DNA from: Haliotis rubra
Taxonomy: Eukaryota
Length of the DNA stretch: 64,000 nucleotides
Assembly: GCF_003918875.1 (NCBI RefSeq)
Contig: NW_025767028.1
Span: 930,001 to 994,000 of the forward strand
Direction: 5' to 3'
Of the stretch, positions 12,602-62,529 are shown in pieces. How positions within the stretch are numbered: position 1 is the first letter of the stretch; every line of letters starts with the position of its first letter. Both the position numbers and the translations under genes were made by a program. The notes below the pieces were generated by a model. It was given only the letters and a program-made list of their open reading frames with translations. It was not told the origin of the DNA and searched no databases.

Positions 12602-13102
12602 TCAGGTGAAAGCAGTGTTGAGACCTGCTTGGATTTATATGCCGGAAAGATGCACATAGGCACGTGTCAAATTCCCATTTAATCTTAGCGTATTTGAAGG
12701 AAATTAAACTATATGATAGAAGTAAATTTTTCTGAAAGTCAGGTTTTACTGTTTACTGTGAAAAGGACCGGCGTTTTAGTGATCTTTGTCATCACTTTTA
12801 TTCTTATTAGTATATACAGGGAAATATATGCTTTCTAACCTCGAATAGCTGCAAATCTGCTGATGCGGCCTTAAGCAACATTTACTCACTACCCTCACCT
12901 GTTGGAGATTTGACCAAGAAAACAAACAAACAAGCAGCCCGATTATGTCTCTTTCCTCTAAGTTTCAACACCTGATTCAACATGACTTGAAGCACCACAA
13001 TGTGTGACTTAATGTTCTTGTGTACATTAGGCTTGACATAAATCTTGTAGTAAATTATTATTAATAGAGCAATCATATTGTGTATAGGCTAATCTTCGGG
13101 CC

Positions 13103-14491: not shown

Positions 14492-14562
14492 TTATCCATT
14501 CCCACGCTTGAGTGATGCTGCATGACACCACCGTACACCGAATACACAAAAGAAGATCTACC

Positions 14563-22480: not shown

Positions 22481-22486
22481 TTTATT
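22481..22486 (-). terminator. Polyadenylation signal of the membrane-protein gene
   Basis: AATAAA on the minus strand about 67 nt after the stop. Confidence 0.5.
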
Positions 22487-22552: not shown

Positions 22553-22646
22553 TTAAACCCTGGCCAGCCCGCTGCTTTCTGTGAGGTATCTCCTGTAAGC
22601 GTTGTACAGCTTCATGAAGTTCTGTGGGTTGGTGATGTTGAATTCT
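22553..22646 (-). CDS. Membrane-protein gene, terminal exon (EFNITNPQNFMKLYNAYRRYLTESSGLARV*)
   Basis: tttctttcAG acceptor, phase 2, TAA at 22555-22553. Confidence 0.8.
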
Positions 22647-23211
22647 CTGAAAGAAACCCAAGGTGTATGAAGCGACATATACGNNNNNNNNNNNNNNNNN
22701 NNNNNNNNNNNNNNNNNNNNNNNNNNNNNNNNNNNNNNNNNNNNNNNNNNNNNNNNNNNNNNNNNNNNNNNNNNNNNNNNNNNNNNNNNNNNNNNNNNNN
22801 NNNNNNNNNNNNNNNNNNNNNNNNNNNNNNNNNNNNNNCTGGTGTGTGTGAGAGAGTGTGTGTGTTGGAGCGTGTGTGTGAGAGAGTGTGTGCTGTTGTG
22901 TGTTTGTGTGTGAGAGTGTGCGTGCTGGTGTGTGTGTGTGCATGCGCGCTGGTGTGTGTGTGTGTGAGAGAGAGAGAGAGCTCGTATGTGCTATCGCTTT
23001 TACGGAATCAGCATACTTATTCATTGTTTTCATTTACAGGGCAAATTGTGTGAATCTCAAGTCACGATAGCGTGTTATTAATTCACTACTGACCTGACGG
23101 GAACTTGCATATAAGTTATATTCAGACCGACAGCTGGGACGTACACACTATATTCAATCCTTACACTAACACGGCCTATTGCCAGCACGTTCAACCTTCT
23201 ACATATCTCAC

Positions 23212-24429
23212 CTCTGTACCTCCCTCTGGAACAGATAGTCTCCAGTACCTCCAGTCATGCCTCGTCCGAGCTTCCCAGTAGACACTGTAGCCACGCCCCC
23301 TCCTCCACCAGAACTCGACATCATCGACATGGCTCCTCCCCCTCCAGAGCTTGACATCATGGCTCCTCCCCCTCCAGAGCTTGACATCATGGCTCCTCCC
23401 CCTCCAGAGCTTGACATCATGACCCCTTCCCCTCCAGAGCTTGACATCATGGCTCCTCCACCTCCAGAGCTTGACATCATGGCCCCTTCCCCTCCAGAGC
23501 TTGGTATCATGGCTCCTCCCCTCGGGACATGGTGCCGCCTCCTACGGCACTAGTTATCAAGCCGGAACCACCGGAATTTGACATCTTTCCACCAGAGCTC
23601 GACCTCATTGAACTGCGGACTTCGGATCTCGACGTTGTATTAGCACCTCCTCCAGAACTCGACATCACAGAGCCCAGTCCGCCAGCATTTGACAGTATGT
23701 TCATGCCACTTCCCCCTCCAGTAGTCTTGATGACGATTCTGCGAGTGGAACCAGATCCTGAAGAGCCTTGTCCACCAGTTGCCAAGAATTGTCTCCCCTT
23801 TGTTCCTCGAATCGAGAGATTTCTGCCCTCCATCATGTTCGAAGAGATTTGACTTTCTTCCGCGAGATTGGACATGAATCTCTCTGTTCCGCCGGAGATT
23901 GTCTGCCTCCCAAGTGTACCACTTGATAATTGTCGAAGGTGTGTGCCACCTGACGCTGTTTGTCTCCCTTTAATTGACAGTTGTCTGCCACCAGAGGCCG
24001 CTCCAAAACCTGTTATTCCTTGGATCATATCCAACAACCTTGACCCAAGCCCACCGGAAGTGTTATAGCTTGTTGTTGTTGACCTTGTTGTGTTCTTGTT
24101 GCCGGCTTTGTCAAACGTCGTTGTGGTTCTCTGATTTGTTTCCTTCACAACCTGAATCTTCTTCAGTTTTCCCATGCTTCCTGTGTCCAGGGCAACTCTC
24201 CTCAGGGTTCCACCACTAACAAGAGCGGACGATTCGTCATGTTTTCTCCGAACCAGGGTAGTGGAGGTTGTATCCCCTCCGTGACTATATCCGCCAGACC
24301 TGTCATAGGAACTGTTATTTTCCGCCACAGAGGTCATCACCCTTGACTCCTGGCTGTTGAATCCCGAATCACCTGTTGCATCGTGCTTGGCGCTCCTGGA
24401 CATCGCGTCTCCATGGAAGAAGAAGTCCC
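23212..24429 (-). CDS. Membrane-protein gene, large Gly/Ser/Thr-rich exon with a 1-nt frameshift near 23520
   Basis: atttcAG acceptor, GTGAGA donor; joins ORFs 23507..24403 and 23208..23510; contains 30-bp coding repeats (MMSSSGGGGA). Confidence 0.8.
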
Positions 24430-24564
24430 CTGAAATGTTCCCTCATGTTACTGGATATTCCAATATCAAAGTATAGTATTCTACAATATAATTCCATCTT
24501 TCATCGATATCAGTGTTTCTTTTTATTGTGGGTTCGAACCCCGGTTAACCCTTTTGATTTTACG

Positions 24565-24931
24565 ATGGTTTAACTAGCCTGTTAATGTCTACATTATGGT
24601 TTAACCAGCCTGCTAATGTCTGAGAGCTGCACCCCGCCTATGTTATGGTTTAACCAGCCTGCTAATGTCTGAAAGCTGCATCCCGCTTACATTATGGTTT
24701 AACCAGTCTGCTAATGTCTGAGAGCTGCATCCCGCCTACATTATGGTTTAACCAGCCTGCTGATATCTGAGAGCTGCATCCTGTCTACATTATGGTTTAA
24801 CCAGCCTGCTGATATCTGAGAGCTGCATCCTGTCTACATTATGGTTTAACCAGGCTGCTAATGTCTGAGAGCTGCATCCCGTCTACATTATGGTTTAACC
24901 AGCCTTCTGATATCTGAGAGCTGCATCCCGT
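24565..24931. repeat. 49-bp intronic minisatellite, about 7 copies
   Basis: tggtttaaccagcctgctaatgtctgagagctgcatcccgcctacatta. Confidence 0.9.
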
Positions 24932-25014
24932 CAAATCAGAATACAACATTCTCATACAAGTTTAACTCCAGGATCTGCACAATGACACAGTGAGGCCTCT
25001 ACAAGAACACGCAC

Positions 25015-25274
25015 CTGTTGCATCTTCCACGCCACTGCTGACTCCACCTCCCCGCATCCTGGTCCCAGTGTGCTCCTCGGCCGACGACATCTTGTAGTAC
25101 CCCCCGCCATATCCTATACCTGACCCTGAGGCAAGTCCTTCTCCGCCAGATCGTCCCCCGCCTGAACCGAGCCCGCGTGACCCAGCACCGTATCCAAGTC
25201 CATCAGATGACATCCCGGCCCAGCCTCCCGTCTCCAGCTCCTTGATCTTGGCATCAAACTGGTCCTCGGGGATG
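25015..25274 (-). CDS. Membrane-protein gene exon (IPEDQFDAKIKELE...GVEDATG), Gly-rich
   Basis: tgtgtAG acceptor, CAG|GTGCGT donor, 260 nt, phase 2-1; lies in ORF 24962..25330. Confidence 0.8.
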
Positions 25275-25853
25275 CTACACATAAAACCATCGAGTGTCAA
25301 GGAGTGTTCGTTTGTCGTGTGGCACAACACTGAGTAATATCACAGCTATATGACGGAGGCATGTAAAGGATTGTTTTTGGACTAGATAATAGATAATACC
25401 AGGTTAAAATAGACGCTCTCGTGGACGATAAAGCAAATTCACGTTCCCGGGCCTGATCACTGCATCCTTTACTTAGGACCAGCACGTTGTGCCTATAGCT
25501 ATTCTAACAAAGAATAACTTTGATCTAACCATGTTAAGAATGGGCTTAAAGTTTGTACGACGTTCGAGGAGAATAGCTAGCCAGTTCCATAAGTGCCGAT
25601 TTCACCCGGGGCCGGGGCTGTAGCCCATGGCCAGTGGTTAAAGGGCTCGCGCGTCAGGCCGTTGGGCCGTGTTTCTATTGTAAAATAATTAACTGGCTTG
25701 ACATGACGCAGCTAGTCACGTTGTGAATTATGAAAGTTTGAGAAAAGAAAAGTTTTGATGATAATAAAAGCCAACAAAATAACGCATGCCGCTTCCCTGA
25801 CTAGTATATATGCCCATCACAATACAGCTTCCCTCTGTAGCCTAGTAGCCTAC

Positions 25854-25895
25854 CCTTTGAATGTGTCCAGCCATGCACGGGGAAGCTTGTAGTCT
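25854..25895 (-). CDS. Membrane-protein gene exon (DYKLPRAWLDTFKG)
   Basis: tgtttcAG acceptor, GTAGGC donor, 42 nt, phase 2-2. Confidence 0.75.
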
Positions 25896-26232
25896 CTGAA
25901 ACATGCCAGAAAACACATTAATGATACTTTGAAATGTTGAAGTATATAACATGATGGACATTATTACCTCGGATAACCCGAGCTGACTGTGAAGAGCTAG
26001 AAGGTCAATAGTTTTGGACCTATCACCATCGGGTACCCACTTTCTGCTGGGTGAATAGAGGCATTTACCTAAGATTAAATTTCATTTGTGACGTCGTTCC
26101 ATTGTCTGCTCGCTCCATTACGCAGAGGTTAATTTACATTTGTGACGTCATTCCATTGTTTGCTACGATGTGTACCAGTTTCAAATGTATGACTTCATTT
26201 TGTCATTTTGACATTTAATTTTGATAACACTA

Positions 26233-29200
26233 TAGTGCAGTGCAGTGCAGTGCAGTGCAGTGCAGTGTAGTGCAGTGTAGCGCAGTGTAGTGTAGTGTAG
26301 TGCAGTGTAGTGCGGTGTAGTGTAGCGGTGCGGTNNNNNNNNNNNNNNNNNNNNNNNNNNNNNNNNNNNNNNNNNNNNNNNNNNNNNNNNNNNNNNNNNN
26401 NNNNNNNNNNNNNNNNNNNNNNNNNNNNNNNNNNNNNNNNNNNNNNNNNNNNNNNNNNNNNNNNNNNNNNNNNNNNNNNNNNNNNNNNNNNNNNNNNNNN
26501 NNNNNNNNNNNNNNNNNNNNNNNNNNNNNNNNNNNNNNNNNNNNNNNNNNNNNNNNNNNNNNNNNNNNNNNNNNNNNNNNNNNNNNNNNNNNNNNNNNNN
26601 NNNNNNNNNNNNNNNNNNNNNNNNNNNNNNNNNNNNNNNNNNNNNNNNNNNNNNNNNNNNNNNNNNNNNNNNNNNNNNNNNNGTGTAGTGTGTGTAGTGT
26701 AGTGTAGTGCAGTGTAGTGTAGTGTAGTGTAGTGCAGTGTGGTGTAGCGCAGTGTAGTGCAGTGTAGTGTAATGTAGTGTAGTGTAGTGTAGCGTAGCGC
26801 AGTGTAGCGCAGTGTAGTGTAGTGTAGAGTAGTGTAGTGTAGCGCAGTGCAGTGTAGTGTAGTGTAGTTTAGTTTAGTTTAGTGTAGTGTAGTGTAGTGT
26901 AGTGTATGAAGTGTNNNNNNNNNNNNNNNNNNNNNNNNNNNNNNNNNNNNNNNNNNNNNNNNNNNNNNNNNNNNNNNNNNNNNNNNNNNNNNNNNNNNNN
27001 NNNNNNNNNNNNNNNNNNNNNNNNNNNNNNNNNNNNNNNNNNNNNNNNNNNNNNNNNNNNNNNNNNNNNNNNNNNNNNNNNNNNNNNNNNNNNNNNNNNN
27101 NNNNNNNNNNNNNNNNNNNNNNNNNNNNNNNNNNNNNNNNNNNNNNNNNNNNNNNNNNNNNNNNNNNNNNNNNNNNNNNNNNNNNNNNNNNNNNNNNNNN
27201 CGTAGCGTAGCGCAGTGTAATGTATTGTATTGTATTGTAGTGTAGTGTAGTGTAGCGCAGTGTAGTGTAGTGTAGTTTAGTTTAGTTTAGTGTAGTGTAG
27301 CTGACGCAGCGCAGTGTAGTGCTGTGTAGTGTATTGTAGTGTAGTGTATTGTATTGTATTGTAGTGTAGCGCAGTGTAGTGTAGTGTAGTGTAGTTTAGT
27401 TTAGTGTAGTGTAGNNNNNNNNNNNNNNNNNNNNNNNNNNNNNNNNNNNNNNNNNNNNNNNNNNNNNNNNNNNNNNNNNNNNNNNNNNNNNNNNNNNNNN
27501 NNNNNNNNNNNNNNNNNNNNNNNNNNNNNNNNNNNNNNNNNNNNNNNNNNNNNNNNNNNNNNNNNNNNNNNNNNNNNNNNNNNNNNNNNNNNNNNNNNNN
27601 NNNNNNNNNNNNNNNNNNNNNNNNNNNNNNNNNNNNNNGTGTAGTGTAGTTTAGTGTAGAGTAGTGTAGTGTAGTTTAGTGTAGTGTAGCGCAGTGTAGT
27701 GCTGTGTAGTGTAGTATAGGGCACTGTAGTGCAGTGTAGTGTAGTTTAGTGTAGTGCAGTGCACTGTAGTGTAGTGTAGTGTATTGTAGTGTAGCGCAGT
27801 GTAGTGAAGTGTAGTGTAGTGTAATGTAGTGTAATGTAGTGTAATGTAGTGTAATGTAGTGCAGTGTAACACAGTGTAGTGTAACGTATTGTAGTGTAGT
27901 GTTGTAGTGCCAGTGTAGTGTAGTGTAGTGTAGTGTAGTGTAGCGCAGTGTAGTGTAGTGTAGCGCAGTGTAGTGCAGTGTAGTGTAGTGTAGTGTAGTG
28001 TCGCGCAGTGTAGTGCAGTGTAGTGTAGTGAAGTGTAGCGCAGTGTACTGTAGTCTCACGCAGTGCTGTGTAGTGCAGTGTAGTGTAGTGTTGCGCATTG
28101 TAGTGTAGTGATGCACAGTCTCGTGTAATGTAGCGCAGTGTAGTGTGATTTAGTGTAGCTTAGTGTGGCGCAGTGCAGTGGAGGTCAGAAGATTAAATCC
28201 CAGGACGGATCACGGAGCTCTTATGACCGCTACACATGCCTTAGTGTAGTGTAGTGTAGTGTAGTGTAGTGTAGTGTAGTGTAGTGTAGTGTAGTGTAGT
28301 GTAGCGCAGTGTAGTGTAGTGTAGTGTAGCGCAGTGTAGTGTAGTGTAATGTAGTGTAGTGTAGTGTAGCGCAGTGTAGTGTAATGTATTGTATTGTAGA
28401 GTTGGGGTGCGCAGTGTAGTGTAGTGTAGTTTAGGGTAGTGTAGTGTAGTGTAGCGCAGTGTAGNNNNNNNNNNNNNNNNNNNNNNNNNNNNNNNNNNNN
28501 NNNNNNNNNNNNNNNNNNNNNNNNNNNNNNNNNNNNNNNNNNNNNNNNNNNNNNNNNNNNNNNNNNNNNNNNNNNNNNNNNNNNNNNNNNNNNNNNNNNN
28601 NNNNNNNNNNNNNNNNNNNNNNNNGTGCAGTGTAGTGTAGTGTAGTGTAGTGTATGTAGTGTAGTGTAATGGAATGTAGTGTAGTGTAGCGCAGTGTAGT
28701 GTAATGTATTGTGGTGTAGTGTCGTAGTGCGCAGTGTAGTGTAGTGTAGTTTAGTGTAGTGTAGCGCAGTGTAGTGCTGTGTAGTGTAGTGTAGTGTAGT
28801 GCAGTGTAGTGTAGTGCTGTGTAGTGAAGCGTAGTGTGGTGTAGTGTAATGTAGTGTAATGTAGTGTAGTGTAGCGCAGTGTAGTGTAATGTATTGTATT
28901 GTAGTGTTGTAGTGCGCAGTGTAGTGTAGTGTAGTTTAGTGTAGTGTAGCGCAGTGTAGTGCCGTGTAGTGTAGTAGTGTAGCGCAGTGTAGTGTAGTGT
29001 AGTGTAGTGTAATGTAATGTAGTGTAGTGTAGCACAGTGTAGTGTTGCGCATTGTATTGTAGTGTAGTGTTGTGTTGTAGTGCGCAGTGTAGTGTAGTGT
29101 AGTGTAGCAGTGTAGTGTAGTGTAGTGTAGTGTAGTGCAGTGCAGTGTAGTGTAGTGTAGTGTCGCGCAGTGTAGTGCAGTGTAGTGTAGTGCAGTGTAG

Positions 29201-29427
29201 TGTAGTGTCGCGCAGCGTTGTGTAACGCAGTGTAGTGTAGTGTTGCGCAGTGTAGTGTAGTGTCGCGCAGTGTAGTGCAGTGTAGTGTAGTGTAGTGTAG
29301 TGTCGCGCAGCGTTGTGTAGCGCAGTGTAGTGTAGTGTTTCGCAGTGTAGTGTAGTGTTGCGCAGTCTCGTGTAATGTAGCGCAGTGTAGTGTGAATTAG
29401 TGTAGCTTAGTGTGGCGCAGTGCAGTG
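26233..29427. repeat. (GTAGT)n pentanucleotide microsatellite with four N gaps
   Basis: Direct reading. Confidence 0.95.
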
Positions 29428-29704
29428 GAGGTCAGAAGATTAAATCCCAGGACGGATCACGGAGCTCTTATGACCGCTACACATGCCTTAGCTAACACCC
29501 CCGCCTTAGTCGCCAGGTATGACAAGTGTTCTACCGACCAATTATAACCCCGGTGTTCACGAGGCTTGACGAATGTCTCTGAGTACGTTTTGAATACAGC
29601 AACAGAGAGTGGGTGATAACAGGCGTCGCCATTATTCTATACACCTGGAGCCCTGTCTTTATTGGTAGGAAGTGTTTGTTGATTACATAACGTTGTTTAC
29701 TTAC

Positions 29705-29755
29705 ACCTGTGTTAAATGTTCCGATTTCTTCAGGCCGCTGGCGCCATGCTTTGAC
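29705..29755 (-). CDS. Membrane-protein gene exon (SKHGASGLKKSEHLTQV)
   Basis: ttcttcAG acceptor, GTAAGT donor, 51 nt, phase 2-2. Confidence 0.75.
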
Positions 29756-30447
29756 CTGAAGAACACAAGTATACACACATGGGCACGGGGATGAGACGTC
29801 TGTGAAGAGTTACCTCCCCTGTTCGTGTCGTCAATCAGTAACTGTACCTTATGCTTGTATTAATGAAGTTTACAGGTTTCTCTGCCACGTTGTTTACCAG
29901 ATGGTAGTGAGGTGGGGCTTTCCTCATCTGCCGTAATATCAGTGAAACACTTCTTACAGAGTGATAAAACTCACCCACTCACCCATCCACTCACTTATTA
30001 ACTCACTCACTCACTTACCGTCCCACCCATCCACTCACTCACTCACTCACATATAGAAGTATAAGCCAGAAGCTACAGAAGTATAACAAACTTGGAACCT
30101 GGATAGGTGCCAAGACGATTCTACCGACATGTATACCAACGACAAACAACCCTCGTTTATTGTTTACCACGAGAGTTCACGATTTAAAACGAGAGCGCTA
30201 AGGAAAACAACGTGTATTTTGCATTATGTGCATAAACATTTTGCGTTTTCAGATTCGATTGATACTTTTATCTGTGTGCTGAATATTCTATATTTGAAAC
30301 CTCTGAATCCGGGCATCAAACATTCAGTAATACCAGCTAATCTGAACACACAAAGAGTGCACCTTCCGAATAACTGAACTGATAGTTGGCGTTGATCTAT
30401 AGAATCTGCTGTGCGAGTCACGGCTGAAGAAATGTAATGTATGTTAC

Positions 30448-30634
30448 CCGCAACACACGCCCTTCCTCCACCAAGGGCAGAGGAGACAGAAGATGAAGAA
30501 CATGAGGAAGAGGAAGAAGGCTAGAGCCAGGAGAATGGCGGCCAAGATGGCAGTCTCGTCACGCGACAGGCCAGCCAGAGGTACCAGACCCATCCCGTGG
30601 ACGTGAGGCACGTGGCGAAGTCCATTGACTGCAA
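30448..30634 (-). CDS. Membrane-protein gene, transmembrane exon (AVNGLRH...AILAAILLALAFFLFLMFFIFCLLCPWWRKGVCCG)
   Basis: ctcttcttgcAG acceptor, GTAACA donor, phase 1-2. About 25-residue hydrophobic helix followed by RK and a Cys cluster. This frame is absent from the ORF track. Confidence 0.85.
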
Positions 30635-31082
30635 CTGCAAGAAGAGACAGTCATATTCGTTGTTATGCAAAATATTGAAGTTATCTTTGATACCGATGTT
30701 CGCCTTAAAAAGTAAGTACAGCAAGTAGCAGGTAAATGTGATAGAGCTAATGTACCAAAAATCTCCCTCAAAATTCAATTTATTGTAAGGTCATTTGTAC
30801 ATATTGACCCGATGGTGACACGTGTTTTGTTTGGTTGTTTGTTATGAATATACCTGCTGTTAGACGTCCGTGTGTAAGTACTCGAGCTAACTAATGTTTC
30901 TGAATATACAGTATATAAAAAGCAATCCTTCTACATTAAAAAGGAGCCCCATTGAGAAGGGAGAATCAGTACATGATGAAATCTAGACTTGCCGCATGTA
31001 TGGCTTTACAATGGGAGAAAGGTCTAGACAGAAGGGACAATAATGCGGTTCAAGGACAGTGATCAAACTACTTATCCGGATC

Positions 31083-31213
31083 AGACATATCCGACACTTC
31101 ACTAGCCCTTTGGACAGACATATCCGACACTTCACTAGCCCTTTGGACAGACATATCCGACACTTCACTAGCCCTTTGGACAGACATATCCGACACTTCA
31201 CTAGCCCTTTGGA
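31083..31213. repeat. 33-bp tandem repeat, 4 copies
   Basis: gacatatccgacacttcactagccctttggaca. Confidence 0.9.
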
Positions 31214-31379
31214 TTGAAGTTTTTTCGAGTAAAACAAAATTGGCATATGGCATTTGTTATTCTTTGCTATTTGATAAATAATGTTTAGACCAATCAAACG
31301 TTTAGACTCAATTCAAGCACCCACTATGTTATGTATATATATACGCACAAAATGTCCAAAATAGTACAGGTGTTCAGTC

Positions 31380-31740
31380 AAAAATATTGCATAGATAAAT
31401 AAAAACAGAATGCCTTTTTCTCCAACATGTTTCGTTCTTTACTCTTCAGGGAGATTGTAACGGTTACAGTATGACGTCATTACATATATATATTGTGACG
31501 ACACAATAGGGACAACATTCTAGAGCGACAAGGTCACAGCTTGCAATGGTTTAACATTGGTTTGAACTTGTTTATGAAGTAGTGTTCTTTTAAAGTTCGT
31601 TTTACTTTGTCCGAATTTTGAATTTGATAAAAAGCAAATATTGTAAATTAAACATCGCTTCCTTTCGCATTTAACATCTTTTCCTTTTAACGATGTTAAA
31701 TTTACAATATTTCCTTTTTATCAAGTTCAAAATTCGGACA
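31380..31740 (-). mobile_element. Penelope-like 3' fragment with inverted 5' piece
   Basis: FTIFAFYQ...KEHYFINKFKPMLN..* (31534-31646), downstream hammerhead, 50-bp inverted repeat 31608-31657 / 31691-31740. Confidence 0.7.
31420..31453 (-). ncRNA. Minimal type I hammerhead ribozyme motif
   Basis: CUCC-CUGAAGA-G(UAAAGAA)C-GAAACAUGUU-GGAG: 4-bp stem I, canonical core, palindromic stem III. Confidence 0.65.
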
Positions 31741-32204
31741 TATATATATAACATATATATGTTACATTGAACATGAATATCTCCACTAATTTGGGGGAAA
31801 CAACTGCAAACTGCAGATAGATTGCACGATGATCATGCATCAAATTACTGAAAGCATGTGCAGATATCGTGCATGTGAACAGCTGGGTTTTGGTGTAAGG
31901 TTTTGTTAAGAATTCGCCAATTTTCACTGAGTTTCATCGCTTATTGAACTCTTGACAATAATATTTTCAACGTTACGATTCTGTTTTACAATACAAGACG
32001 TAGGGGGAACAGAATCTTAACCCACATTTTGTGATTTTCTGAGATATCTATTTTAGTGGGTTGCCAGACCATGAGGAATCATCTGAAATCTAGTTACCTC
32101 CCCTATCTCTACCAGTTTGTTCATTGCATCATCTCCCTAAATAAATATCACAATCCACATTCCCAGAGACCAATTTCAGAAAGAAAGTAATAACCCACAA
32201 AAAC

Positions 32205-33814
32205 ATGGCGGAGCACATGTTCACGGATCAGGAAGTTTTAGATCAATTGTGAGCAAACACAGAGGATGACGACAGCACTGCAGATCCAACATTTGTAGAA
32301 TCTGATAGGGAACATGATGTCAGCACTTCTGATTTGGTGAGTTTTAATTTCTTTGTGATTGTGACATTTTTTATGTCTTTTGTTGGTTATCATGTTGTTT
32401 CCCAAACACCTATTTCACAAGCCCTCACAACCCTCATGTTGTATAACGTGGAAACAGTCTAATACTGACAGACTATTTTAATGAGAAATGTAAGTGGTCT
32501 AAATAATAATCCATATTTTAAGTGTATGGTTTGTTTTCCAAAAGAGAAGGCCATAGAAAAAGATCTCAATAGGGTTATCACATTCTTTGTGAAATGAAAG
32601 TAAGGCATGCTGTGGGGTACGATGCATCGGAATATCAATGGAAATTTTAAATTAAAGGTACTGAATGAGGTTTTTAATGTTGACATTTGTTTTCTTTTAT
32701 AGATAACCCTGATAGATCTGCCTGAAGAAATAATAGTCAGAATCTTGGAATATGTTGAAGTGGAGGACTTAATCACATCTATCACCCTTGTCTGCAAAAC
32801 ACTTTACAATATTGTCCATGGAAACAGTATTCTCTGGAGCAAGATAGAAGAATTTTCCGTTGATTTTTTCCAATTCAAAATGAACCACCTACAAAACATT
32901 ATGAGTCATTCAGCATGTTTTAGATACTTTGAGGTACCATATGCTGACGATCTGTTTTCATCCACCTGTGCAAGTGATATGTTGTGTGAGTGTGAGTGAG
33001 TTAAGATTTAGAGTCACATCGGCAATATTTCAGCCGTATCGTGACTAAATCAAGATATAAATATAGTAAGAATTAAAGGTAAATTATAAAATTCTGTCAC
33101 CGAAGGACAGTAAAACAACTAGATTATCACAGATATAAATATAAAACTAGTAACTTAATCTAAAATATTTTAACTATACATGGCAATACAATATAAAAAC
33201 AGGCTAGAGATTGCTAACGACTAAAGGTAGATCACCATACTAGGGACCATGGGGACTTACAGTACATTTGCTTCCTGCATGGGCCCTAGCTGGATTTACA
33301 CCATCCCCTCAGCCGTTAGCAATTTAGACACATCTAGATATGTTGTGTGAAAACCATGTCCCTCATCATGTCCAGTTTGTTTACACTTCTGAACACTGGA
33401 GAGAAGTCATCAGACAGTCATCCCCAAAGCTTCAAGTGAATGAGATGTCATCAAAAGAGTTCTACAGACTGAGTGACCTCAGAGAAATGTTCACTGTGAG
33501 AACAAAAGCAGCAGACGGGTCCCATTTGAGGTTCAAGGATGTAGTTCGGTTCAAAATGGAGTCTGGTGAGAACGTCGGTATGATTGAGACCAGCACCTCC
33601 TTCAACTCTGATCTGTGGACTGCCATATCCGTTAAAAAACGTGGAGCACAAAAGGACATCAGTGCATTTCAATTCAAAAACAAATATTTGGCTCCAAGGA
33701 AAATTGACAAAGCAAAACATGCTGCCCTACATACCCCCAGTCCAGCACCTGTTCTACATGTCTCTGAAGGAAGCCTCAAAGGGTCAAGACACTGAGGACG
33801 TTCTCTATGCATAG
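32205..33814 (+). pseudogene. Disrupted spliced F-box/transposase-fragment fusion gene
   Basis: Exon 32205-32336 (aaaacATGg, in-frame TGA at 32250, GTGAGT donor); exon from 32703 (LIDLPEEIIVRILEYVEVEDLITSITLVCKTLYNIV..ILW); interrupted by an insertion at 32990-33336; frameshift near 33725. Confidence 0.7.
32990..33336 (-). mobile_element. 5'-truncated non-LTR retroelement 3' fragment
   Basis: 14-bp TSD GATATGTTGTGTGA (32976-32989, 33337-33350); ends in aatattgcc...aactcactcac, resembling the SINE tails. Confidence 0.75.
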
Positions 33815-33815
33815 A

Positions 33816-33959
33816 ATGAAGAGTTCAGCTATTCTTACAATCTTGGGATATTTTGAAATTGGGGATTTAATTAAGTATGCCACCCCTGTCTGTGAAAGAC
33901 TTCACAGTATTGTTCATGTTACTGAGTTTGAAGAGTTTCAACTACAAATCAAAGATTGA
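33816..33959 (+). pseudogene. Second, truncated F-box-like segment
   Basis: ILTILGYFEIGDLIKYATPVCERLHSIVH aligns without gaps to the first F-box at protein and DNA level. Confidence 0.6.
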
Positions 33960-34734
33960 TTTTCACAATGTTAAGTACAAGTTTACTGGGTTTTGAATGT
34001 TGAAGTCTTCAAAATTGTTGACTTTTAATCTTGAAGGTTTGATTCTCTAGCAAACTTGACAGTAAAGGATTAGTGTTTTGGGCAGTACACTGATTCCACT
34101 GTGCATATGGTATGTGTGAGATGAAACTGAATCAGTTTGGTCACAAACACTTCAAGGTATGAGCTTGGATAGTCTGGCATTTCTATACATCATTTCGTTG
34201 AAGGGAAAATTGTTTTAATTTATTTGTTATATGAATTTTGAACAAATATAAATATATTTTTAATTCTGTCAACCGTGTTTTGTTGTTTCTAGTAGGCACG
34301 TGATCAAGTAAATCTGATAATTTTAGAAAGACAATGACAACACTATTTCAGAAAAAACGTAATAATCCACACAGTCGTCAGAGGTGGTGTAATTTCAAAT
34401 GTCTTCAAAACAACTTACTGTGGTTATATATGGCCAAATATTTGTCATTTGGAAAGGACATGGATCAACTACCAAATAAATACAAATTTGTGCGATAATA
34501 ATAACTTAGGGATTTATCAACTGAATTAAATAAATCAAATGCGTTTTTCTCGAAATAACAGTAGTGTGGGTTATGGTTATGTTCTCCTGGGGTCTTCAAT
34601 ACATCAGTTCATGTGTAACAACACATTTAAACGGTATGAAACATTGTGCAAAATCTACTTTAGAACCGTTGACTGAAGTAAGTGGCTACATTTACACTAG
34701 TGAGTCTAAACTTTTGATTGGTAATATACATAGA

Positions 34735-35308
34735 GTGGCTAGCTAGTAGAGGCTAGCACCCCTAGTACAGTGGCTAGCTAGTAGAGGCTAGCACCCCTAG
34801 TACAGTGGCTAGCTAGTAGAGGCTAGCACCCCTAGTACAGTGGCTAGCTAGTAGAGGCTAGCACCCCTAGTACAGTGGCTAGCTAGTAGAGGCTAGCACC
34901 CCTAGTACAGTGGCTAGCTAGTACAGTGGGGGCTAGTAGAGGCTAGCACCCCTAGTACACAGCTAGTGGCTAGCTAGTGGGGCCAGCTAGAGCACCCCTA
35001 GTACAGTGGCTAGCTAGTAGAGGCTAGCACCCTAGCACCCCTAGTACAGTGGCTAGCTAGCTAGCTAGGAGGCCAGCACCCCTAGAGGCTAGCACCCTAG
35101 TACAGTGGCTAGCTAGTAGAGGCTAGCACCCCTAGTACAGTGGCTAGCTAGTAGAGGCTAGCACCCCTAGTACAGTGGCTAGCTAGTAGAGGCTAGCACC
35201 CCTAGTACAGTGGCTAGCTAGTAGAGGCTAGCACCCCTAGTACAGTGGCTAGCTAGTAGAGGCTAGCACCCCTAGTACAGTGGCTAGCTAGTAGAGGCTA
35301 GCACCCCT
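34735..35308. repeat. 35-bp CTAG-rich minisatellite (one more unit at 37242-37272)
   Basis: agtggctagctagtagaggctagcacccctagtac. Confidence 0.9.
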
Positions 35309-35309
35309 T

Positions 35310-37160
35310 ACATACCCCCCAGTGCAGCACCTGTTCTACACATACCCCCAGTCCAGCACCTGTTCTACATACCCCCAGTCCAGCACCTGTTCTACATACC
35401 CCCAGTCCAGCACCTGTTCTACATACCCCCAGTCCAGCACCTGTTCTACATACTCCCCAGTCCAGCACCTGTTCTACATACCCCCAGTGCAGCACCTGTT
35501 CTACACATGCCCCCAGTCCAGCACCTGTTCTACATACCCCCAGTCCAGCACCTGTTCTACATACCCCCAGTCCAGCACCTGTTCTACATGCCCCAGTCCA
35601 GCACCTGTTCTACATAGCCCCAGACCAGCACCTGTTCTATATATACCCCAGTCCAGCACCTGTTCTACATATAGCCCCCAGTCCAGCACCTGTTCTACAT
35701 ACCCCCCAGTCCCAGCACCTGTTCCTACATACCCCCAGTCCAGCACCTGTTCTACATACCCCCAGTCCAGCACCTGTTCTACATGTACCCCCAGTCCAGC
35801 ACCTGTTCTACATACCCCAGTCCAGCACCTGTTCTCACATACCCCAGTCCAGCACCTGTTCTACATGCCCCTCAGTCCAACACCCTTGTTCTACATACCC
35901 CCAGTCCAGCACCTGTTCTACATGTCTCTGAAGGCTGCCCTACATACCCCCAGTCCAGCATCTGTTCTATTATAGCCCCAGTCCAGCACCTGGTCTACAT
36001 ACCCCAGTCCAACACCTGTTCTACATATCCCCAGTCCAGCACCTGTTCTACATACCTCAGTCCAGCACCTGTTCTACATACCCCCAGTCCAGCACCTGTT
36101 CTCATACATAGCCCCAGTCCAGCACCTGTTCTACATACCCCCAGTCCAGCACCTGTTCTACATGCCCCCCAGTCCAACACCTGTTCTACATACCCCAGTC
36201 CAGCAACACCTGTTCTACATATACCCCAGTCCAGCACCTGTTCTACATACTCCCCCAGTCCAGCACCTGTTCTACATACCCCAGTCCAGCACCTGTTCTA
36301 CATGCCCCCCAGTCCAACACCTGTCTCTACATACCCCCAGTCCAGCACCTGTTCTACATACCCCAGTCCAGCACCTGTTCTACATACCCCAGTCCAGCAC
36401 CTGTTCTACATACCCCCAGTCCAGCACCTGTTCTACATACCCCCAGTCCAGCACCTGTTCTACATACCCCCAGTCCAGCACCTGTTCTACATACCCCCAG
36501 TCCAGCACCTGTTCTACATACCCCCAGTCCAACACCTGTTCTACATACCCCAGTCCAGCACCTGTTCTACATACCCCAGTCCAGCACCTGTTCTACATAC
36601 CCCCAGTCCAGCACCTGTTCTACATACCCCCAGTCCAGCACCTGTTCTACATGCCCCCAGTCCAACACCTGTTCTACATACCCCCAGTCCAGCACCTGTT
36701 CTACATACCCCCAGTCCAGCACCTGTTCTACACATACCCCCAGTCCAGCACCTGTTCTACATGGGCCCCCCAGTCCAGCACCTGTTCTACATACCCCCAG
36801 TCCAGCACCTGTTCTACTATACCCCAGTCCAGCACCTGTTCTACATACCCCAGTCCAGCACCTATTCTACATACCCCAGTCCAGCACCTGTTCTACATAC
36901 CCCCAGTCCAGCACCTGTTCTACATATACCCCTGATCAGCACCTGTTCTACATACCCCCAGTCTGCCCCATGTCCAACACCTGTTCTACATACCCCAGTC
37001 CAGCACCTGCATGCCCCTGCAGCACCTGTTACATACCCCAGTCCAGCACCTGTTCTACACATACCCCCAGTCCAGCACCTGTTCTCAGTCCATACCCCTG
37101 TTCTGCATGCCCCAGTCCAGCACCTGTTCTACATACCCCCAGTCCAGCACCTGTTCCAGC
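35310..37160. repeat. 25-27-bp minisatellite derived from transposase coding sequence
   Basis: cccccagtccagcacctgttctacata, identical to 33728-33759. Confidence 0.9.
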
Positions 37161-38033
37161 ACCAGGGGGCATTTAATTAAGTATGCCACCCTCTGTTCAG
37201 AAAGACTTTACAGTATTGTTCATGTTACTGAGTTTGAAGAATAGCTAGTAGAGGCTAGCACCCCTAGTACAGCTTTGGCGTTTGTGTCGATCCTAGCTAG
37301 TAGAGGGCTAGAACGGTGATAGTCGTCATAAGCATCGATCTACGCAATTTGTGATATGACGACAGGCATGAAGCAAGTCGACGGGTCTGGCCACGCACTT
37401 CCGTTAAACCAGTTGTAACCTGGAGCTTCATAGAGGCTTGTGATGGGACGGGACGGTGATTGATGGCTACGTGCATCTGAATCAGACCCCACCGCCAATC
37501 ACGTGGAGGTGTGTCAGCGAGCCTCCCATGACACGCACCTGTAGGACGTCACAGCTAATGCTTTAACCAATCGTACATCTTACTATCTCTCCACTCGAAC
37601 AACATTTGTGTACTGAATAATGAGTAACACATTAAACTAGTCATACCGGTTAAATACGCAGCATGTATAACTCGAGACAAAAAAAAAGTTACGTTGAAAA
37701 AATTGTTATATTTTTCTCAGAATTGAGCAGGGGGGAGCAAGCTAAGAATATATTACTGTATTATGTGACGCATTTACAAAACTCAAACATTAATTAATAT
37801 ATAACGTGATTCTAATACGCCAAGCGACTTCATAAGGGATATCACTTGATGATAATGAGCGAGTTACATCCTGGTTCTAATATACTTCCCAGAACCTTCT
37901 CCCGTAAGTAACCGACTTGAGAGGTGACAGGTCAGCATTAACCACCTGTAATGTCCAGCGTGTTACTGTTCGACAAAACACAGTCAACAAAATACCGAAT
38001 CTGACGATCACATCCATTTTCATGTAAAAGGAC

Positions 38034-38190
38034 ACGGTTGCCTAGTGATTAAAACGTTCGCTCGTCATGCCGAAGACCCAGGTTCGATTCCCTTCTTGGG
38101 TACGTGTGAAGCCCATTTCTGGTTTCCATCATAGTGATATTGTTGAAATATTGCTATAAGCGGCGTAAAGACATACTCACTCACTCACTC
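38034..38190 (+). mobile_element. tRNA-derived SINE, family B
   Basis: A/B boxes and shared tail. Confidence 0.8.
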
Positions 38191-38481
38191 TTACAAAAGG
38201 ATGATTCTTCATGGCGGTTTTACAGACATGCCACAAGGTATCAGATCAGTTCTACATAACTTCTAGCTTGTCGGGTTTTCGGTTACCCGCACGAAAAGTG
38301 CCGGAACCTCGTTCATCCGGACTCTTTATACATGGACCACGTTTATCCAGACATTACTGCTGATCGTGAAATCACTCAATAGCCACGATTTTTAATCATG
38401 ACACTTATTAATCTGGACGATATAGCCAGAGGGCTACTGTCCGCACTACGGGGTGTGAGTGTAGGAAGGTGTGGTACTTAC

Positions 38482-38532
38482 ATAACGCCGCGCCATGACA
38501 GTAGCAGTATGGCTTGGTGACCCAGTACTCGC
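38482..38532 (-). CDS. Membrane-protein gene exon (xEYWVTKPYCYCHGAAL)
   Basis: cttcctgcAG acceptor, GTAAGT donor, 51 nt, phase 1-1, open and in phase with the TM exon. Confidence 0.6.
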
Positions 38533-38579
38533 CTGCAGGAAGACAGGATGAACATAGTCAGTAAACAACACCTTAAAAC

Positions 38580-39136
38580 GGGAGACGGTGATTTCGTAGA
38601 CAAAACCAGTTCGTAGACGCGGTGAATTCGTAACCCAGACCGGTTCGTAGACGGTGATTTCGTAGACGTGTATAAATAATTGAATATATAGTGTATATTA
38701 AGTTTGATTTTTACTTACATGTTACTTAGAATGTTTATAACGAAGTTGTTATGCTTTGTTTTCAGTGATACTTCTCTGCTGGTCTGCATAGTTAAACGTT
38801 GAATGACGATACTTACCCAATACATATCTTTTAATTTTACACAACTGAATTTAATATATTAGCGGCCTATGATTTGTCGGAATTTGTGACATGGACCACT
38901 TTGAAGCATATTTTGTTATTTTATTATTTAAGGATATTTTCACCGCCGATCATACTTACCTGATATATTTTATTTATTTCACAAAATGCAAACACTTTTC
39001 GTCGATTTTCTTCATCATTGAGGTTGAACTATTCCCATTTTAATAACGTCTACGAATTCACCGCTCAATCCGTCTACGAATCCACCAGATTTCCACGTCT
39101 ACGAACCGGTTTTGGTTACGAATTCACCTACAGCCC
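38580..39136. mobile_element. MITE with internally repetitive TIRs (MULE/Merlin-like)
   Basis: TIRs built of ttcgtagac/gtctacgaa repeats, GG..CC ends, 8-9-bp TSD (C)CTTAAAAC. Confidence 0.7.
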
Positions 39137-39610
39137 CTTAAAACATCAGTAACTAAATATCTATTGTAAAATCAGCCTGCAGCAAATTGTTAAGGAGGTA
39201 GGGTTTATCTCGAGCTGTGTTTATTAGTTGTTTACTCTCGCAGTCATTAATATTCCAGCTGTATGACAATGATTTGTACTTTATTCAAATGGTTTGGTCA
39301 AAACACCGTCCAGCGTCATCTATACTCGACGAGGGGCACTCAGCCACCGACCACCCGACCAACTAATATTCCTTGCTAAGGGGTAACTGTTACAGTAGGC
39401 ACGGCTGGTGCAAGATTATGGCTTCCAAACTGTTGACAATCTCTCTCTCTCTCCCCTTCTGCTTGAATATTGCTACAGATAAGTGGCTTAGACCTATACT
39501 CACTCATATCGCAGAGATTAAGTGCTGAAAGTGAGTCCCGTCACAAATCAACCTCACTACCAGACTAAAACCATGCTATAAAGCATCGGCCGTGGTGTTC
39601 CTGAAATAGT

Positions 39611-39763
39611 GGGCAATGGGCTGGGTTAAAGCGTTCGCTCGTCACGCCGAAGACCCGGGTTCAATTCCCCACATGGGTACAATGTGTAAAACCCATTTCT
39701 GGTGTCCCCCGCCGTGATATTATTGGATCATTGCTAAAAACGGCGTAAAACTAAACTCACTCA
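39611..39763 (+). mobile_element. tRNA-derived SINE, family B
   Basis: B box, shared tail, TSD-like CCTGAAATAGTG. Confidence 0.8.
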
Positions 39764-39952
39764 CCTGAAATAGTGCTAGGGCGGCGTAAACTTTCACTTA
39801 CCCTTTTAAAGGTGAACGTCCATACAAACGCGTGATGAGCGAACTAAAGTCCTTAAGACGGAATCATGTTGCATAATAAACACGAAAAGCTGCTGTATTC
39901 AACAAGCACCACACCAACTTTTCATAATAATTTTCAAATAGATTATATTTAC

Positions 39953-39962
39953 CTCTCTTCAT
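39953..39962 (-). CDS. Candidate first coding exon (MKR/G) of the membrane-protein gene
   Basis: ATG AAG AGA G|GTAAAT; the phase-1 donor matches the next exon. Too short to be sure. Confidence 0.25.
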
Positions 39963-43423: not shown

Positions 43424-45531
43424 AAACAGTCATTGTTGTATGACGTGTACACTGTAATGTAAAACATACATTGTTGTATGACGTGTACACTGTAATGTAA
43501 ACAGTCATTGTTGTATGACGTGTACACTGTAATGTAAACAGTCATTGTTGTATGACGTGTACACTGTAATGTAAAACATACATTGTTGTATGACGTGTAC
43601 ACTGTAATGTAAAACATACATTGTTGTATGACGTGTACACTGTAATGTAAAACATACATTGTTGTATGACGTGTACACTGTAATGTACACATTCATTGTT
43701 GTATGACTTGTACACTGTAATGTAAACATTCATTGTTGTATGACGTGTACACTGTAATGTAAAACATACATTGTTGTATGACGTGTACACTGTAATGTAA
43801 AACATACATTGTTGTATGACGTGTACACTGTAATGTAAACAGTAATTGTTGTATGACGTGTACACTGTAATGTAAAACATACATTGTTGTATGACGTGTA
43901 CACTGTAATGTAAACAGTCATTGTTGTATGACGTGTACACTGTAATGTAAAACATACATTGTTGTATGACGTGTACACTGTAATGTAAAACATACATTGT
44001 TGTATGACGTGTACTCTGTAATGTAAAACATACATTGTTGTATGACGTGTACACTGTAATGTAAAACATACATTGTTGTATGACGTGTACACTGTAATGT
44101 ACACATTCATTGTTGTATGACTTGTACACTGTAATGTAAACATTCATTGTTGTATGACGTGTACACTGTAATGTAAAACATACATTGTTGTATGACGTGT
44201 ACACTGTAATGTAAAACATACATTGTTGTATGACGTGTACACTGTAATGTAAACAGTCATTGTTGTATGACGTGTACACTGTAATGTAAAACATACATTG
44301 TTGTATGACGTGTACACTGTAATGTAAAACATACATTGTTGTATGACGTGTACACTGTAATGTAAAACATACATTGTTGTATGACGTGTACACTGTAATG
44401 TAAAACATACATTGTTGTATGACGTGTACACTGTAATGTAAAACATACATTGTTGTATGACGTGTACACTGTAATGTAAACATTCATTGTTGTATGACTT
44501 GTACACTGTAATGTAAAACATACATTGTTGTATGACGTGTACACAGTAATGTAAAACATTCATTCTTGTATGACGTGTACACAGTAATGTTAAACATTCA
44601 TTCTTGTATGACGTGTACACAGTAATGTTAAACATTCATTGTTGTATGACGTGTACACTGTAATGTAAACATTCATTCTTGTATGACGTGTACACAGTAA
44701 TGTTAAACATTCATTCTTGTATGACGTGTACACAGTAATGTTAAACATTCATTGTTGTATGACGTGTACACTGTAATGTAAACATTCATTCTTGTATGAC
44801 GTGTACACAGTAATGTTAAACATTCATTCTTGTATGACGTGTACACAGTAATGTTAAACATTCATTGTTGTATGACGTGTACACTGTAATGTAAACATTC
44901 ATTCTTGTATGACGTGTACACAGTAATGTTAAACATTCATTCTTGTATGACGTGTACACAGTAATGTTAAACATTCATTGTTGTATGACGTGTACACTGT
45001 AATGTAAACATTCATTCTTGTATGACGTGTACACAGTAATGTTAAACATTCATTCTTGTATGACGTGTACACAGTAATGTTAAACATTCATTGTTGTATG
45101 GCGTGTACACAGTAATGTTAAACATTCATTGTTGTATGACGTGTACACTGTAATGTAAGCATTCATTGTTGTATGACGTGTACACTGTAATGTAAAACAT
45201 TCATTGTTGTATGACGTGTACACTGTAATGTAAACATTCATTGTTGTATGACGTGTACACTGTAATGTAAACATTCATTGTTGTATAACGTGTACACTGT
45301 AATGTTAAACATTCATTGTTGTATGACGTGTACACTGTAATGTTAAACATTCATTGTTGTATGACGTGTACACAGTAATGTTAAACATTCATTGTTGTAT
45401 GACATGTACACTGTAATGTAAACATTCATTGTTGTATGACGTGTACACTGTAATGTAAAACATACATTGTTGTATGACGTGTACACTGCAATGTAAAACA
45501 GTCATTGTTGTATGACATGTACACTGTAATG
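43424..45531. repeat. 37-38-bp minisatellite
   Basis: cattgttgtatgacgtgtacactgtaatgtaaaacata. Confidence 0.95.
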
Positions 45532-48808: not shown

Positions 48809-48899
48809 GATCGACAACTGTTATCGGCCTGTTGGTTACACTCACGCTAGTCTAAGGCATAAACGTTACTTCGGTCAGCTAAAAATGTCACCAGTTTGG

Positions 48900-51830: not shown

Positions 51831-52075
51831 GTCAGTGTATTGCAACGGTCCGGTTGATGTGGTCTGGTCAAGACGCGATTAACATTCTATAATGATACCC
51901 TTTGTTAATCAACAAAAAAACAAATCGTTGTGTTAAATATTATCCTTAGCAAATGAAGAATAGAATTAAGCCAACAAGTTTGTGTCCTGTACGTTGCTAT
52001 AGAGACCAGATGACAGATCCTGGAGAACGTTACACCCATCTATCATTCATACATTAGAGGACTCTGCTCAAACAA

Positions 52076-56892: not shown

Positions 56893-56952
56893 TATATAAT
56901 ATATAATATTCACTAAGAATCCAGTTATACTTTCCCGATTACATGCCACGTT

Positions 56953-62528: not shown

Positions 62529-62529
62529 T

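What the first reader, a model, noticed from the sequence alone, without database searches (positions are those of the whole stretch)
22553..39962. Hidden multi-exon gene for a single-pass membrane protein with a very large Gly/Ser-rich cytoplasmic tail
Seven exons (plus one tentative first exon) with GT-AG sites chain in consistent phase and end at a stop followed by AATAAA. With one base restored they total 1914 nt, or 637 aa. Architecture: short CYC-containing outside segment, TM helix, Cys cluster, DYKLPRAW motif, roughly 500 aa of low-complexity tail with RQxS-type repeats and recurring TGD(F/Y)xF motifs, and C-terminal LARV (possible PDZ ligand). I do not recognise the family. Inference: the tail resembles intermediate-filament-anchoring adhesion receptors (nematode MUA-3/MUP-4, collagen XVII), so it is a candidate epithelial or shell-attachment receptor. 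More ectodomain exons may exist that I could not find.
Basis: partly seen in the sequence, partly recalled or inferred. Interest (0 to 1): 0.7.

Follow-up and report, generated by a model that had tools for sequence, protein, structure and literature searches.

The report
Abalone orphan membrane-protein gene, real
It encodes a membrane-anchored protein with a long, floppy glycine/serine-rich tail that has no characterised relatives, and nothing supports the proposed role in filament or shell attachment.

Summary
Confirmed. Eight minus-strand exons (39962 to 22553) have GT-AG borders and chaining phases. Every exon matches, in order, the 597-aa RefSeq model XP_067653786.1 of Haliotis asinina ("uncharacterized transmembrane protein DDB_G0289901-like") at 88-100% identity, including the tentative MKRG first exon. 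The genome is very probably Haliotis rubra.

All five N gaps lie in introns, and the orthologue is colinear across both gapped introns. The missing base maps to a G4 run (23521-23518) at the edge of a coding 30-bp repeat whose full units carry G5. This is either an assembly error or a recent 1-nt deletion.

The protein has about 45 aa outside, one hydrophobic span, a juxtamembrane CxxC and CC, and a roughly 550-aa tail that is 45% Gly/Ser/Thr. AlphaFold2 models the tail as mostly disordered, with two conserved islands.

No Pfam, PDB or Atlas relative turned up. Of 1.84 billion representatives, only the Haliotis protein and one 58%-identical exon-level ORF matched. The gene is single-copy.

It is a lineage-restricted orphan, closest in layout to palmitoylated transmembrane adaptors, by analogy only. 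The filament-anchoring adhesion-receptor idea and the "more ectodomain exons" idea are not supported.

The parts
39953..39962 (-). E0: start codon plus 7 nt (MKR and the first base of Gly), donor GTAAAT. The 5' end of this exon (the TSS) is unknown.
   Evidence: Sequence. It is the first ATG of its frame after a stop at 40085-40083. It equals residues 1-4 of P0002.
38482..38532 (-). E1: 51-nt micro-exon encoding EYWVTKPYCYCHGAAL (the outside segment with CYC). Acceptor CTGCAG, donor GTAAGT.
   Evidence: 17 of 17 residues are identical to P0002. The DNA is unique in the genome, apart from a repeat end at 38573-38620 in the adjoining intron.
30448..30634 (-). E2: the rest of the outside segment, the single hydrophobic span, and the juxtamembrane CxxC...CC cluster.
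   Evidence: 95% identical to P0002 residues 22-83. Kyte-Doolittle peak over residues 45-78. AlphaFold2 helix 45-85 with pLDDT above 80.
29705..29755 (-). E3: 51-nt micro-exon (SKHGASGLKKSEHLTQV), donor GTAAGT.
   Evidence: 88% identical to P0002 residues 84-100.
25854..25895 (-). E4: 42-nt micro-exon (DYKLPRAWLDTFK).
   Evidence: 100% identical to P0002 residues 101-114.
25015..25274 (-). E5: short helix (IPEDQFDAKIKELE) followed by a Gly/Ser/Tyr-rich stretch.
   Evidence: AlphaFold2 helix 117-129 at low confidence.
23212..24429 (-). E6: 1218-nt main tail exon. It holds the conserved central island (beta hairpin, helix, RQxS cluster), the Gly/Ser/Met repeats and the TGDYLF end.
   Evidence: 92.8% identical to P0002, and 58% identical to P0001, which reads through in a single frame.
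23518..23521 (-). G4 run where the reading frame slips by one base. The full repeat units carry G5 at this position. The switch must fall between 23549 and 23513.
   Evidence: Both relatives read straight through here.
23328..23521 (-). Coding 30-bp tandem repeat, 6.5 copies, each unit encoding GGGGAMMSSS. It is longer than in H. asinina and absent from P0001.
22553..22646 (-). E7: last exon, from EFNITNPQNF to SSGLARV, then stop TAA (22555-22553).
   Evidence: 96.8% identical to P0002 residues 567-597.
22481..22486 (-). AATAAA, 66 nt after the stop codon.
   Evidence: Its use as a polyadenylation signal was not tested.

Best explanation
This is the single-copy orthologue, in what is very probably Haliotis rubra, of the RefSeq-predicted H. 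asinina gene for XP_067653786.1. The gene is lineage-restricted (abalone plus at least one more distant relative) and has no characterised homologue.

Shown:
- The eight-exon structure.
- Orthology to the H. asinina model.
- One hydrophobic span.
- The composition of the tail.
- The conserved islands in the tail.

Inferred:
- The protein inserts without a signal peptide as a type III membrane protein, with about 45 residues outside (including CYC) and the C-terminus inside.
- It is S-acylated on the CxxC and CC cysteines that follow the span.
- It carries a roughly 550-aa, mostly disordered, Gly/Ser/Thr-rich and net basic cytoplasmic tail.

The mechanism I think most likely is a palmitoylated membrane scaffold that has no enzymatic activity and is not a receptor. 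Its tail would present conserved short motifs to cytoplasmic partners. These motifs are a cluster of basophilic-kinase-type sites (RQxS, RQxxS, RNxS), three TGD[FY]xF-type aromatic motifs, a beta hairpin plus helix island, and a helical C-terminus ending in ARV. The intervening Gly/Ser/Met repeats would act as an expandable spacer.

The one-base frame defect in this assembly is most likely a homopolymer error of the Nanopore/Illumina hybrid assembly.
For: Gene and orthology:
- Exon borders, phases and the 1913-nt sum.
- Colinear match of P0002 to every exon.
- P0002 is XP_067653786.1 of H. asinina.
- G000 has 1,378,282,171 bp in 2,855 contigs. H. rubra GCA_003918875.1 has 1,378,265,264 bp in 2,854 scaffolds (PMC6774278).
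- The gene is single-copy.

Restricted distribution:
- Only P0001 and P0002 are real hits among 1.84 billion representatives.
- Nothing else appeared in the word searches.
- No Pfam, PDB or Atlas match.

Topology and acylation:
- One hydrophobic span.
- Flank charges of -1 on the N side and +3 on the C side.
- Cys70-x-x-Cys73 and Cys81-Cys82.
- The charge-difference rule for signal-anchor orientation is established knowledge.

Tail:
- Gly 20.6%, Ser 15.2%, Thr 8.9%, Pro 0.6%, no Cys, net charge +17.
- 457 of 597 residues have pLDDT below 50. The exceptions are a hairpin at 295-323 with a helix at 329-339 (block-mean pLDDT 76-80 over residues 301-320) and C-terminal helices at 554-590.
- The same islands are 65-80% identical to the distant P0001. 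The repeat region is absent from P0001.

Frame defect:
- A G4 run where the repeat units carry G5.
- The downstream frame stays open and conserved through E7.
Against:
- The RefSeq orthologue is itself a computational model.
- Topology, acylation, phosphorylation and partner binding are all inferred from sequence rules.
- The tail has few tyrosine motifs, so it differs from the vertebrate adaptors that inspire the analogy.
- The six NxS/T sequons and the Thr-rich runs would also suit an extracellular tail.
- AlphaFold2 was run on a single sequence, so low confidence is weak proof of disorder.
- The frame defect could be a real deletion.
Confidence: 0.45

Rival explanations
1. The protein is an adhesion receptor that anchors intermediate filaments (like MUA-3/MUP-4 or collagen XVII) at epithelial or muscle-shell attachment sites.
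For: It has a long cytoplasmic tail rich in Gly/Ser with GYGGGYY-like stretches reminiscent of keratin end domains. Abalone do have strong muscle-shell attachments (general knowledge). No test run here speaks for this reading.
Against: The ectodomain is about 45 aa with no adhesion module. Pfam finds nothing at E<=1. No relative of these receptors appears in any search. The orthologue shows that no further ectodomain exons exist.
Confidence: 0.05
2. Opposite orientation (type II). The short N-terminus is cytoplasmic and the Gly/Ser/Thr-rich part is extracellular, forming a membrane-tethered mucin-, proteoglycan- or matrix-like protein.
For: The tail has six NxS/T sequons, Thr runs and many Ser-Gly dipeptides, and no signal peptide is present.
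Against: The flank charges (-1 N side, +3 C side) and the long hydrophobic span favour N-out. A CxxC plus CC cluster right after the span is typical of cytoplasmic S-acylation. The tail has no cysteine at all and only 0.6% Pro.
Confidence: 0.12
3. In this genome the gene is truly frameshifted. It would be a null or truncated allele, or a young pseudogene, ending about 130 residues early at the TGA at 23512-23510.
For: The assembly as given has a 1-nt shortfall and an in-frame TGA. The site borders an unstable 30-bp repeat.
Against: The downstream frame stays open for 113 codons. It is 88-97% identical to H. asinina through E7, with an intact donor, acceptor and stop. The defect sits in a G homopolymer of a Nanopore-based hybrid assembly (PMC6774278).
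Confidence: 0.15
4. There is no functional protein. The chain would be a gene-prediction artefact shared by two pipelines, over low-complexity and repeat DNA.
For: The composition is low-complexity, introns are full of minisatellites, and there is no RNA evidence here.
Against: There are seven consensus GT-AG introns in consistent phase. Protein-level conservation follows an island pattern down to a 58%-identical relative that keeps the acceptor position and the exon end. Four tiny coding segments (10, 51, 51 and 42 nt) are conserved at 88-100%.
Confidence: 0.03

Closest known systems
XP_067653786.1, 'uncharacterized transmembrane protein DDB_G0289901-like' [Haliotis asinina] (P0002)
   Same: It has the same eight coding segments in the same order, at 88-100% identity per exon. 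The start (MKRG) and the end (SSGLARV) are the same.
   Different: The window has more GGGGAMMSSS units (637 against 597 codons) and a one-base frame defect at 23521-23518. The orthologue is only a predicted, unstudied protein.
P0001, a 311-aa exon-level ORF from an unnamed ENA contig of 8,013 bases
   Same: It is 58% identical over exon 6 and keeps the same acceptor position before GDFFF and the same exon end (TGDYLYQREIQR). The central and C-terminal islands are 65-80% identical.
   Different: It lacks the Gly/Ser/Met repeat block.
Vertebrate transmembrane adaptor proteins (TRAPs: PAG/Cbp, LAT, NTAL)
   Same: The layout matches: a short ectodomain, one span, a juxtamembrane CxxC, and a long tail with no enzymatic activity that carries docking motifs (PMC3342071; PMC2213442).
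   Different: There is no sequence similarity, and no hit to any Pfam family at E<=1. The tail carries Ser/Thr-type motifs rather than tyrosine motifs, is much richer in Gly/Ser, and has a 45-aa ectodomain. This is an analogy of design only.
MUA-3 / MUP-4 (C. elegans) and collagen XVII
   Same: They are single-pass proteins with a sizeable cytoplasmic domain (from memory, not tested here).
   Different: They have large modular ectodomains that bind matrix. This protein has none.
Dictyostelium DDB_G0289901 (the source of the RefSeq name)
   Same: Presumably a Gly/Ser-rich low-complexity composition. The name was given automatically by the annotation pipeline.
   Different: No Dictyostelium protein reached E<=0.001 with the exon-6 profile among 1.84 billion representatives. 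The name does not show kinship.

Membership tests
Orthologue group of H. asinina XP_067653786.1 | Colinear match over the full length with the same exon order | tested here: met
   tblastn of P0002 on the window, and search of the own genome. E1 to E7 map in order at 88-100% identity and there is no other locus.
Orthologue group of H. asinina XP_067653786.1 | Intact open reading frame | tested here: inconclusive
   One base is missing at the G4 run 23521-23518. Reads could not be examined.
IF-anchoring adhesion receptors (MUA-3/MUP-4, collagen XVII) | Large ectodomain with matrix-binding modules (EGF, LDLa, SEA, VWA or collagen repeats) | tested here: not met
   The ectodomain is about 45 aa. 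Pfam gives 0 families for P0002 at E<=1.
IF-anchoring adhesion receptors (MUA-3/MUP-4, collagen XVII) | Binding to, or co-localisation with, intermediate filaments | not testable with these tools
   Needs microscopy or biochemistry.
Transmembrane adaptor proteins (TRAPs) | Short ectodomain, single span, and a cytoplasmic tail with no enzymatic activity | tested here: met
   Hydropathy and flank charges and no catalytic domain. The definition is from PMC3342071. The orientation is inferred.
Transmembrane adaptor proteins (TRAPs) | Juxtamembrane CxxC palmitoylation motif | tested here: met
   Cys70-L-L-Cys73 at the end of the span, plus Cys81-Cys82. Acylation itself was not tested.
Transmembrane adaptor proteins (TRAPs) | Several tyrosine-based SH2-docking motifs in the tail | tested here: not met
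   Only one Yxx[LIMFV] match in the tail. The conserved motifs are Ser/Thr- and Phe-based.
Transmembrane adaptor proteins (TRAPs) | Sequence homology to LAT, PAG, LAX or SIT families | tested here: not met
   No Pfam family at E<=1.
PDZ-ligand-bearing membrane proteins | C-terminal class I/II motif conserved and bound by a PDZ domain | not testable with these tools
   ARV-COOH is shared with H. asinina. No more distant C-terminus is available, and binding was not tested.

The most novel reading that the evidence does not exclude
The gene would be a vetigastropod-specific invention: a palmitoylated membrane anchor whose glycine/serine/methionine-rich repeat tail forms a membrane-tethered, phosphorylation-controlled condensate or filament-like meshwork. 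This could sit, for example, at the cell cortex of attachment or mantle epithelia. Copy number of the 30-bp coding repeat would tune its length between species.
Probability: 0.07. Interest if true: 0.55.

Novelty: new member of a known kind. Interest (0 to 1): 0.25.

Why it matters
The result shows that reading raw sequence alone can recover a complete eight-exon gene, including a coding segment of only 10 nt and three micro-exons of 42-51 nt. It also flags a probable homopolymer error in a public abalone assembly.

Biologically, the gene is one of many lineage-restricted mollusc genes of unknown function. Its clean layout makes it easy to test: a tiny ectodomain, a CxxC span, and a disordered tail with a few sharply conserved islands and a variable coding minisatellite. 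There is no sign yet that it answers an open question.

Tried and rejected
- Pfam on each exon, and on P0002 and P0001, gave nothing. The only hits were sub-threshold noise (MRAP 13.6 bits, Spore_YtfJ, FtsH_ext).
- PDB sequence search: 0 hits.
- ESM Atlas, whole protein and residues 270-420: best score 0.77, which is below the noise level, and then nothing.
- Word searches: exon 6 found only P0001. P0002 residues 1-140 found only itself. The TM exon found nothing. These searches are limited by candidate length.
- The full HMMER search with the exon-6 profile returned two further hits, P0003 and P0004 (E 1e-8 and 3e-4). They are long bacterial repeat proteins matching about 55-65 profile positions each. 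I rejected them as compositional matches.
- JGI metagenome contigs: no relative.
- Paper search for DDB_G0289901: only unrelated insect and louse papers.
- Own genome: no paralogue.
- I did not run a fold search on the AlphaFold2 model, because mean pLDDT is 41.7 and matches would be meaningless.
I searched the exons one by one by reference and used the natural H. asinina protein P0002 for whole-protein analyses.
- No N stretch was filled in or looked up.


Full report
**What is in the sequence.**
Reading the DNA at their ends gives eight coding segments:

| Exon | Coordinates | Length | Content |
|---|---|---|---|
| E0 | 39962-39953 | 10 nt | ATG plus 7 nt |
| E1 | 38532-38482 | 51 nt | CYC segment |
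| E2 | 30634-30448 | 187 nt | TM span, Cys cluster |
| E3 | 29755-29705 | 51 nt | |
| E4 | 25895-25854 | 42 nt | DYKLPRAW |
| E5 | 25274-25015 | 260 nt | |
| E6 | 24429-23212 | 1218 nt | main tail exon |
| E7 | 22646-22553 | 94 nt | ends LARV, TAA |

All seven introns begin GT and end AG, and three donors are GTAAGT. The split codons at each junction complete sensibly. AATAAA lies 66 nt after the stop.

**The gaps.**
The program's note asked for continuity across the N runs to be tested first. None of the five runs touches an exon. Four lie in intron E3-E4 (1018 N in all) and one lies in intron E6-E7 (155 N, ending 38 nt before the E7 acceptor). So no reading frame is carried across a gap. Only two splice joins span gapped introns.

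Both joins are confirmed by the orthologue, which passes from ...SEHLTEV to DYKLPRAW... and from ...QREVQR to EFNITN... with no extra residues. Intron lengths there remain estimates. No N stretch was filled in or looked up.

**Independent confirmation.**
A word search with exon 6 found one protein, P0001. It is a 311-aa ORF from an unnamed ENA contig and is 58% identical. It begins in intron-like sequence, enters the match at the same acceptor position before GDFFF, and runs in a single frame to TGDYLYQREIQR, which is the same exon end.

A profile of the two sequences was then scored against 1.84 billion representatives. It returned P0001, a 597-aa protein P0002, and two bacterial repeat proteins that I take as compositional noise.

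P0002 is XP_067653786.1, "uncharacterized transmembrane protein DDB_G0289901-like" of Haliotis asinina. Laid on the window, it matches E1 to E7 in order at 88-100% identity, and its first four residues equal E0. No additional N-terminal exons exist in that model.

**Which genome.**
G000 has 1,378,282,171 bases in 2,855 contigs. The Haliotis rubra assembly GCA_003918875.1 has 1,378,265,264 bp in 2,854 scaffolds and was built from Nanopore and Illumina reads (PMC6774278). The difference of about 16.9 kb and one record would fit an added mitochondrial genome; this last point is my inference. The window is therefore very probably from blacklip abalone.

**The one-base defect.**
The frame used from 24427 ends at a TGA at 23512-23510. 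The frame that continues to the exon end opens after a TAG at 23552-23550. The slip must therefore lie in 23549-23513.

That interval holds the first, degenerate unit of a coding 30-bp tandem repeat (23328-23521, 6.5 copies). Three of its units read GGAGGGGGAGGAGCC, with five G. The unit at the slip has four G, at 23521-23518. Both relatives read straight through.

Downstream, 113 codons stay open and E7 is 97% identical to H. asinina. A homopolymer error in a hybrid long-read assembly is the simplest reading. A recent or heterozygous 1-nt deletion cannot be excluded without reads.

**RNA evidence.**

**The protein.**
Exons were searched one by one by reference, and whole-protein analyses used the natural orthologue P0002.

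- **Membrane span.** P0002 has one hydrophobic span (Kyte-Doolittle peak over residues 45-78). Fifteen-residue flanks carry net charge -1 on the N side and +3 on the C side. Cys70-x-x-Cys73 sits at the end of the span, followed by Cys81-Cys82.
- **Topology.** There is no signal-peptide-like N-terminus. By the charge-difference rule for signal anchors (established knowledge), the N-terminal 45 residues, including CYC, face outside and the rest is cytoplasmic.
- **Tail composition.** The tail is 514 aa in H. asinina and about 554 aa here. It is 20.6% Gly, 15.2% Ser, 8.9% Thr and 0.6% Pro, has no Cys, and has net charge +17.
- **Structure prediction.** AlphaFold2 on the single sequence gives the span as a helix with pLDDT above 80. 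It gives a beta hairpin at 295-323 with a helix at 329-339 (10-residue block means of pLDDT 76-80 over residues 301-320), and two C-terminal helices at 554-590 (59-67). It scores 457 of 597 residues below 50.
- **Conservation.** The pattern agrees with the prediction. Against the distant P0001, residues 280-419 are 65-75% identical, except 50% over residues 360-379. Residues 520-567 are 75-80% identical. The first part of the tail is 35-55% identical, and the Gly/Ser/Met repeat block (about residues 436-520) is absent from P0001.
- **Motifs in the conserved islands.** They contain RQLS, RQTAS, RQLSS, RQTIS and RNLS within about 60 residues, and three TGD[FYS]xF motifs, one of which is formed across the E5/E6 junction.

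**Relatives and families.**
- Pfam finds no family for P0002, and only sub-threshold noise for P0001 and the single exons.
- The PDB sequence search finds nothing.
- The ESM Atlas gives nothing above its noise level.
- The N-terminal 140 residues find only P0002 itself, and the TM exon finds nothing, within the length limits of that tool.
- JGI metagenome contigs hold no relative.
- The own genome has no second copy.

The gene is thus a single-copy, lineage-restricted orphan. It is present in at least two abalone species and in one more distant organism of unknown identity.

**How it most likely works.**
The layout is a very short ectodomain, one span, a juxtamembrane CxxC, and a long tail with docking motifs and no enzymatic activity. 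This is the definition given for vertebrate transmembrane adaptor proteins (PMC3342071; PAG has 16 aa outside and a 397-aa tail, PMC2213442).

I therefore favour a palmitoylated membrane scaffold. The conserved islands would bind cytoplasmic partners. The RQxS cluster would be regulated by a basophilic Ser/Thr kinase (R at -3, the CaMKII/PKA/PKD type; this rests on my own knowledge). The repeats would serve as a spacer of variable length.

This is an analogy, not membership. There is no sequence similarity, and the tyrosine motifs that define those adaptors are lacking. Every functional step is inferred.

Intermediate-filament-anchoring adhesion receptors bind matrix through large modular ectodomains. 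This protein has about 45 extracellular residues and no such module. No search linked it to them. The idea is not excluded as a cytoplasmic linker role, but nothing found here speaks for it. The PDZ-ligand reading of ARV-COOH is untested.

**Verdict.**
The gene is already present as an uncharacterised RefSeq model in a sister species, so interest is modest.

Noticed in passing
window 47978-48817 (-): One uninterrupted 279-aa ORF encodes a DHHC palmitoyltransferase domain (PF01529, E 3e-26). It lies on the same strand about 8 kb upstream of the start codon of a gene whose product has a juxtamembrane CxxC/CC cluster. This is probably coincidence.
   Followed up: partly
window 26234-29413 and 35309-36963: The introns are crowded with minisatellites. 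These are 5-bp GTGTA-type arrays (hundreds of copies, interrupted by four N gaps) in intron E3-E4, and a 27-bp array of about 60 copies in intron E1-E2. A 49-bp array of 7 copies lies at 24587-24932 in intron E5-E6.
   Followed up: no
window 38573-38620 (-): About 40-48 bases just upstream of the E1 acceptor region match at 92-100% the same end of a highly repeated element. Forty or more places were scored out of 123 candidates in the genome. Similar tRNA-like-looking translations occur at 39629-39727 and 38052-38153, which suggests SINE copies.
   Followed up: partly
window 38482-38532, 29705-29755, 25854-25895: E1, E3 and E4 are micro-exons of 51, 51 and 42 nt. Each is a multiple of three, so each could be skipped without breaking the frame. 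They are possible cassette exons.
   Followed up: no
   Followed up: no
window 11500-12660, 13155-14525, 43540-44640, 50100-51900, 52380-53250, 56900-63600: Long tandem arrays give very long spurious ORFs in several frames on both strands, up to 1033 aa. They are not genes.
   Followed up: no
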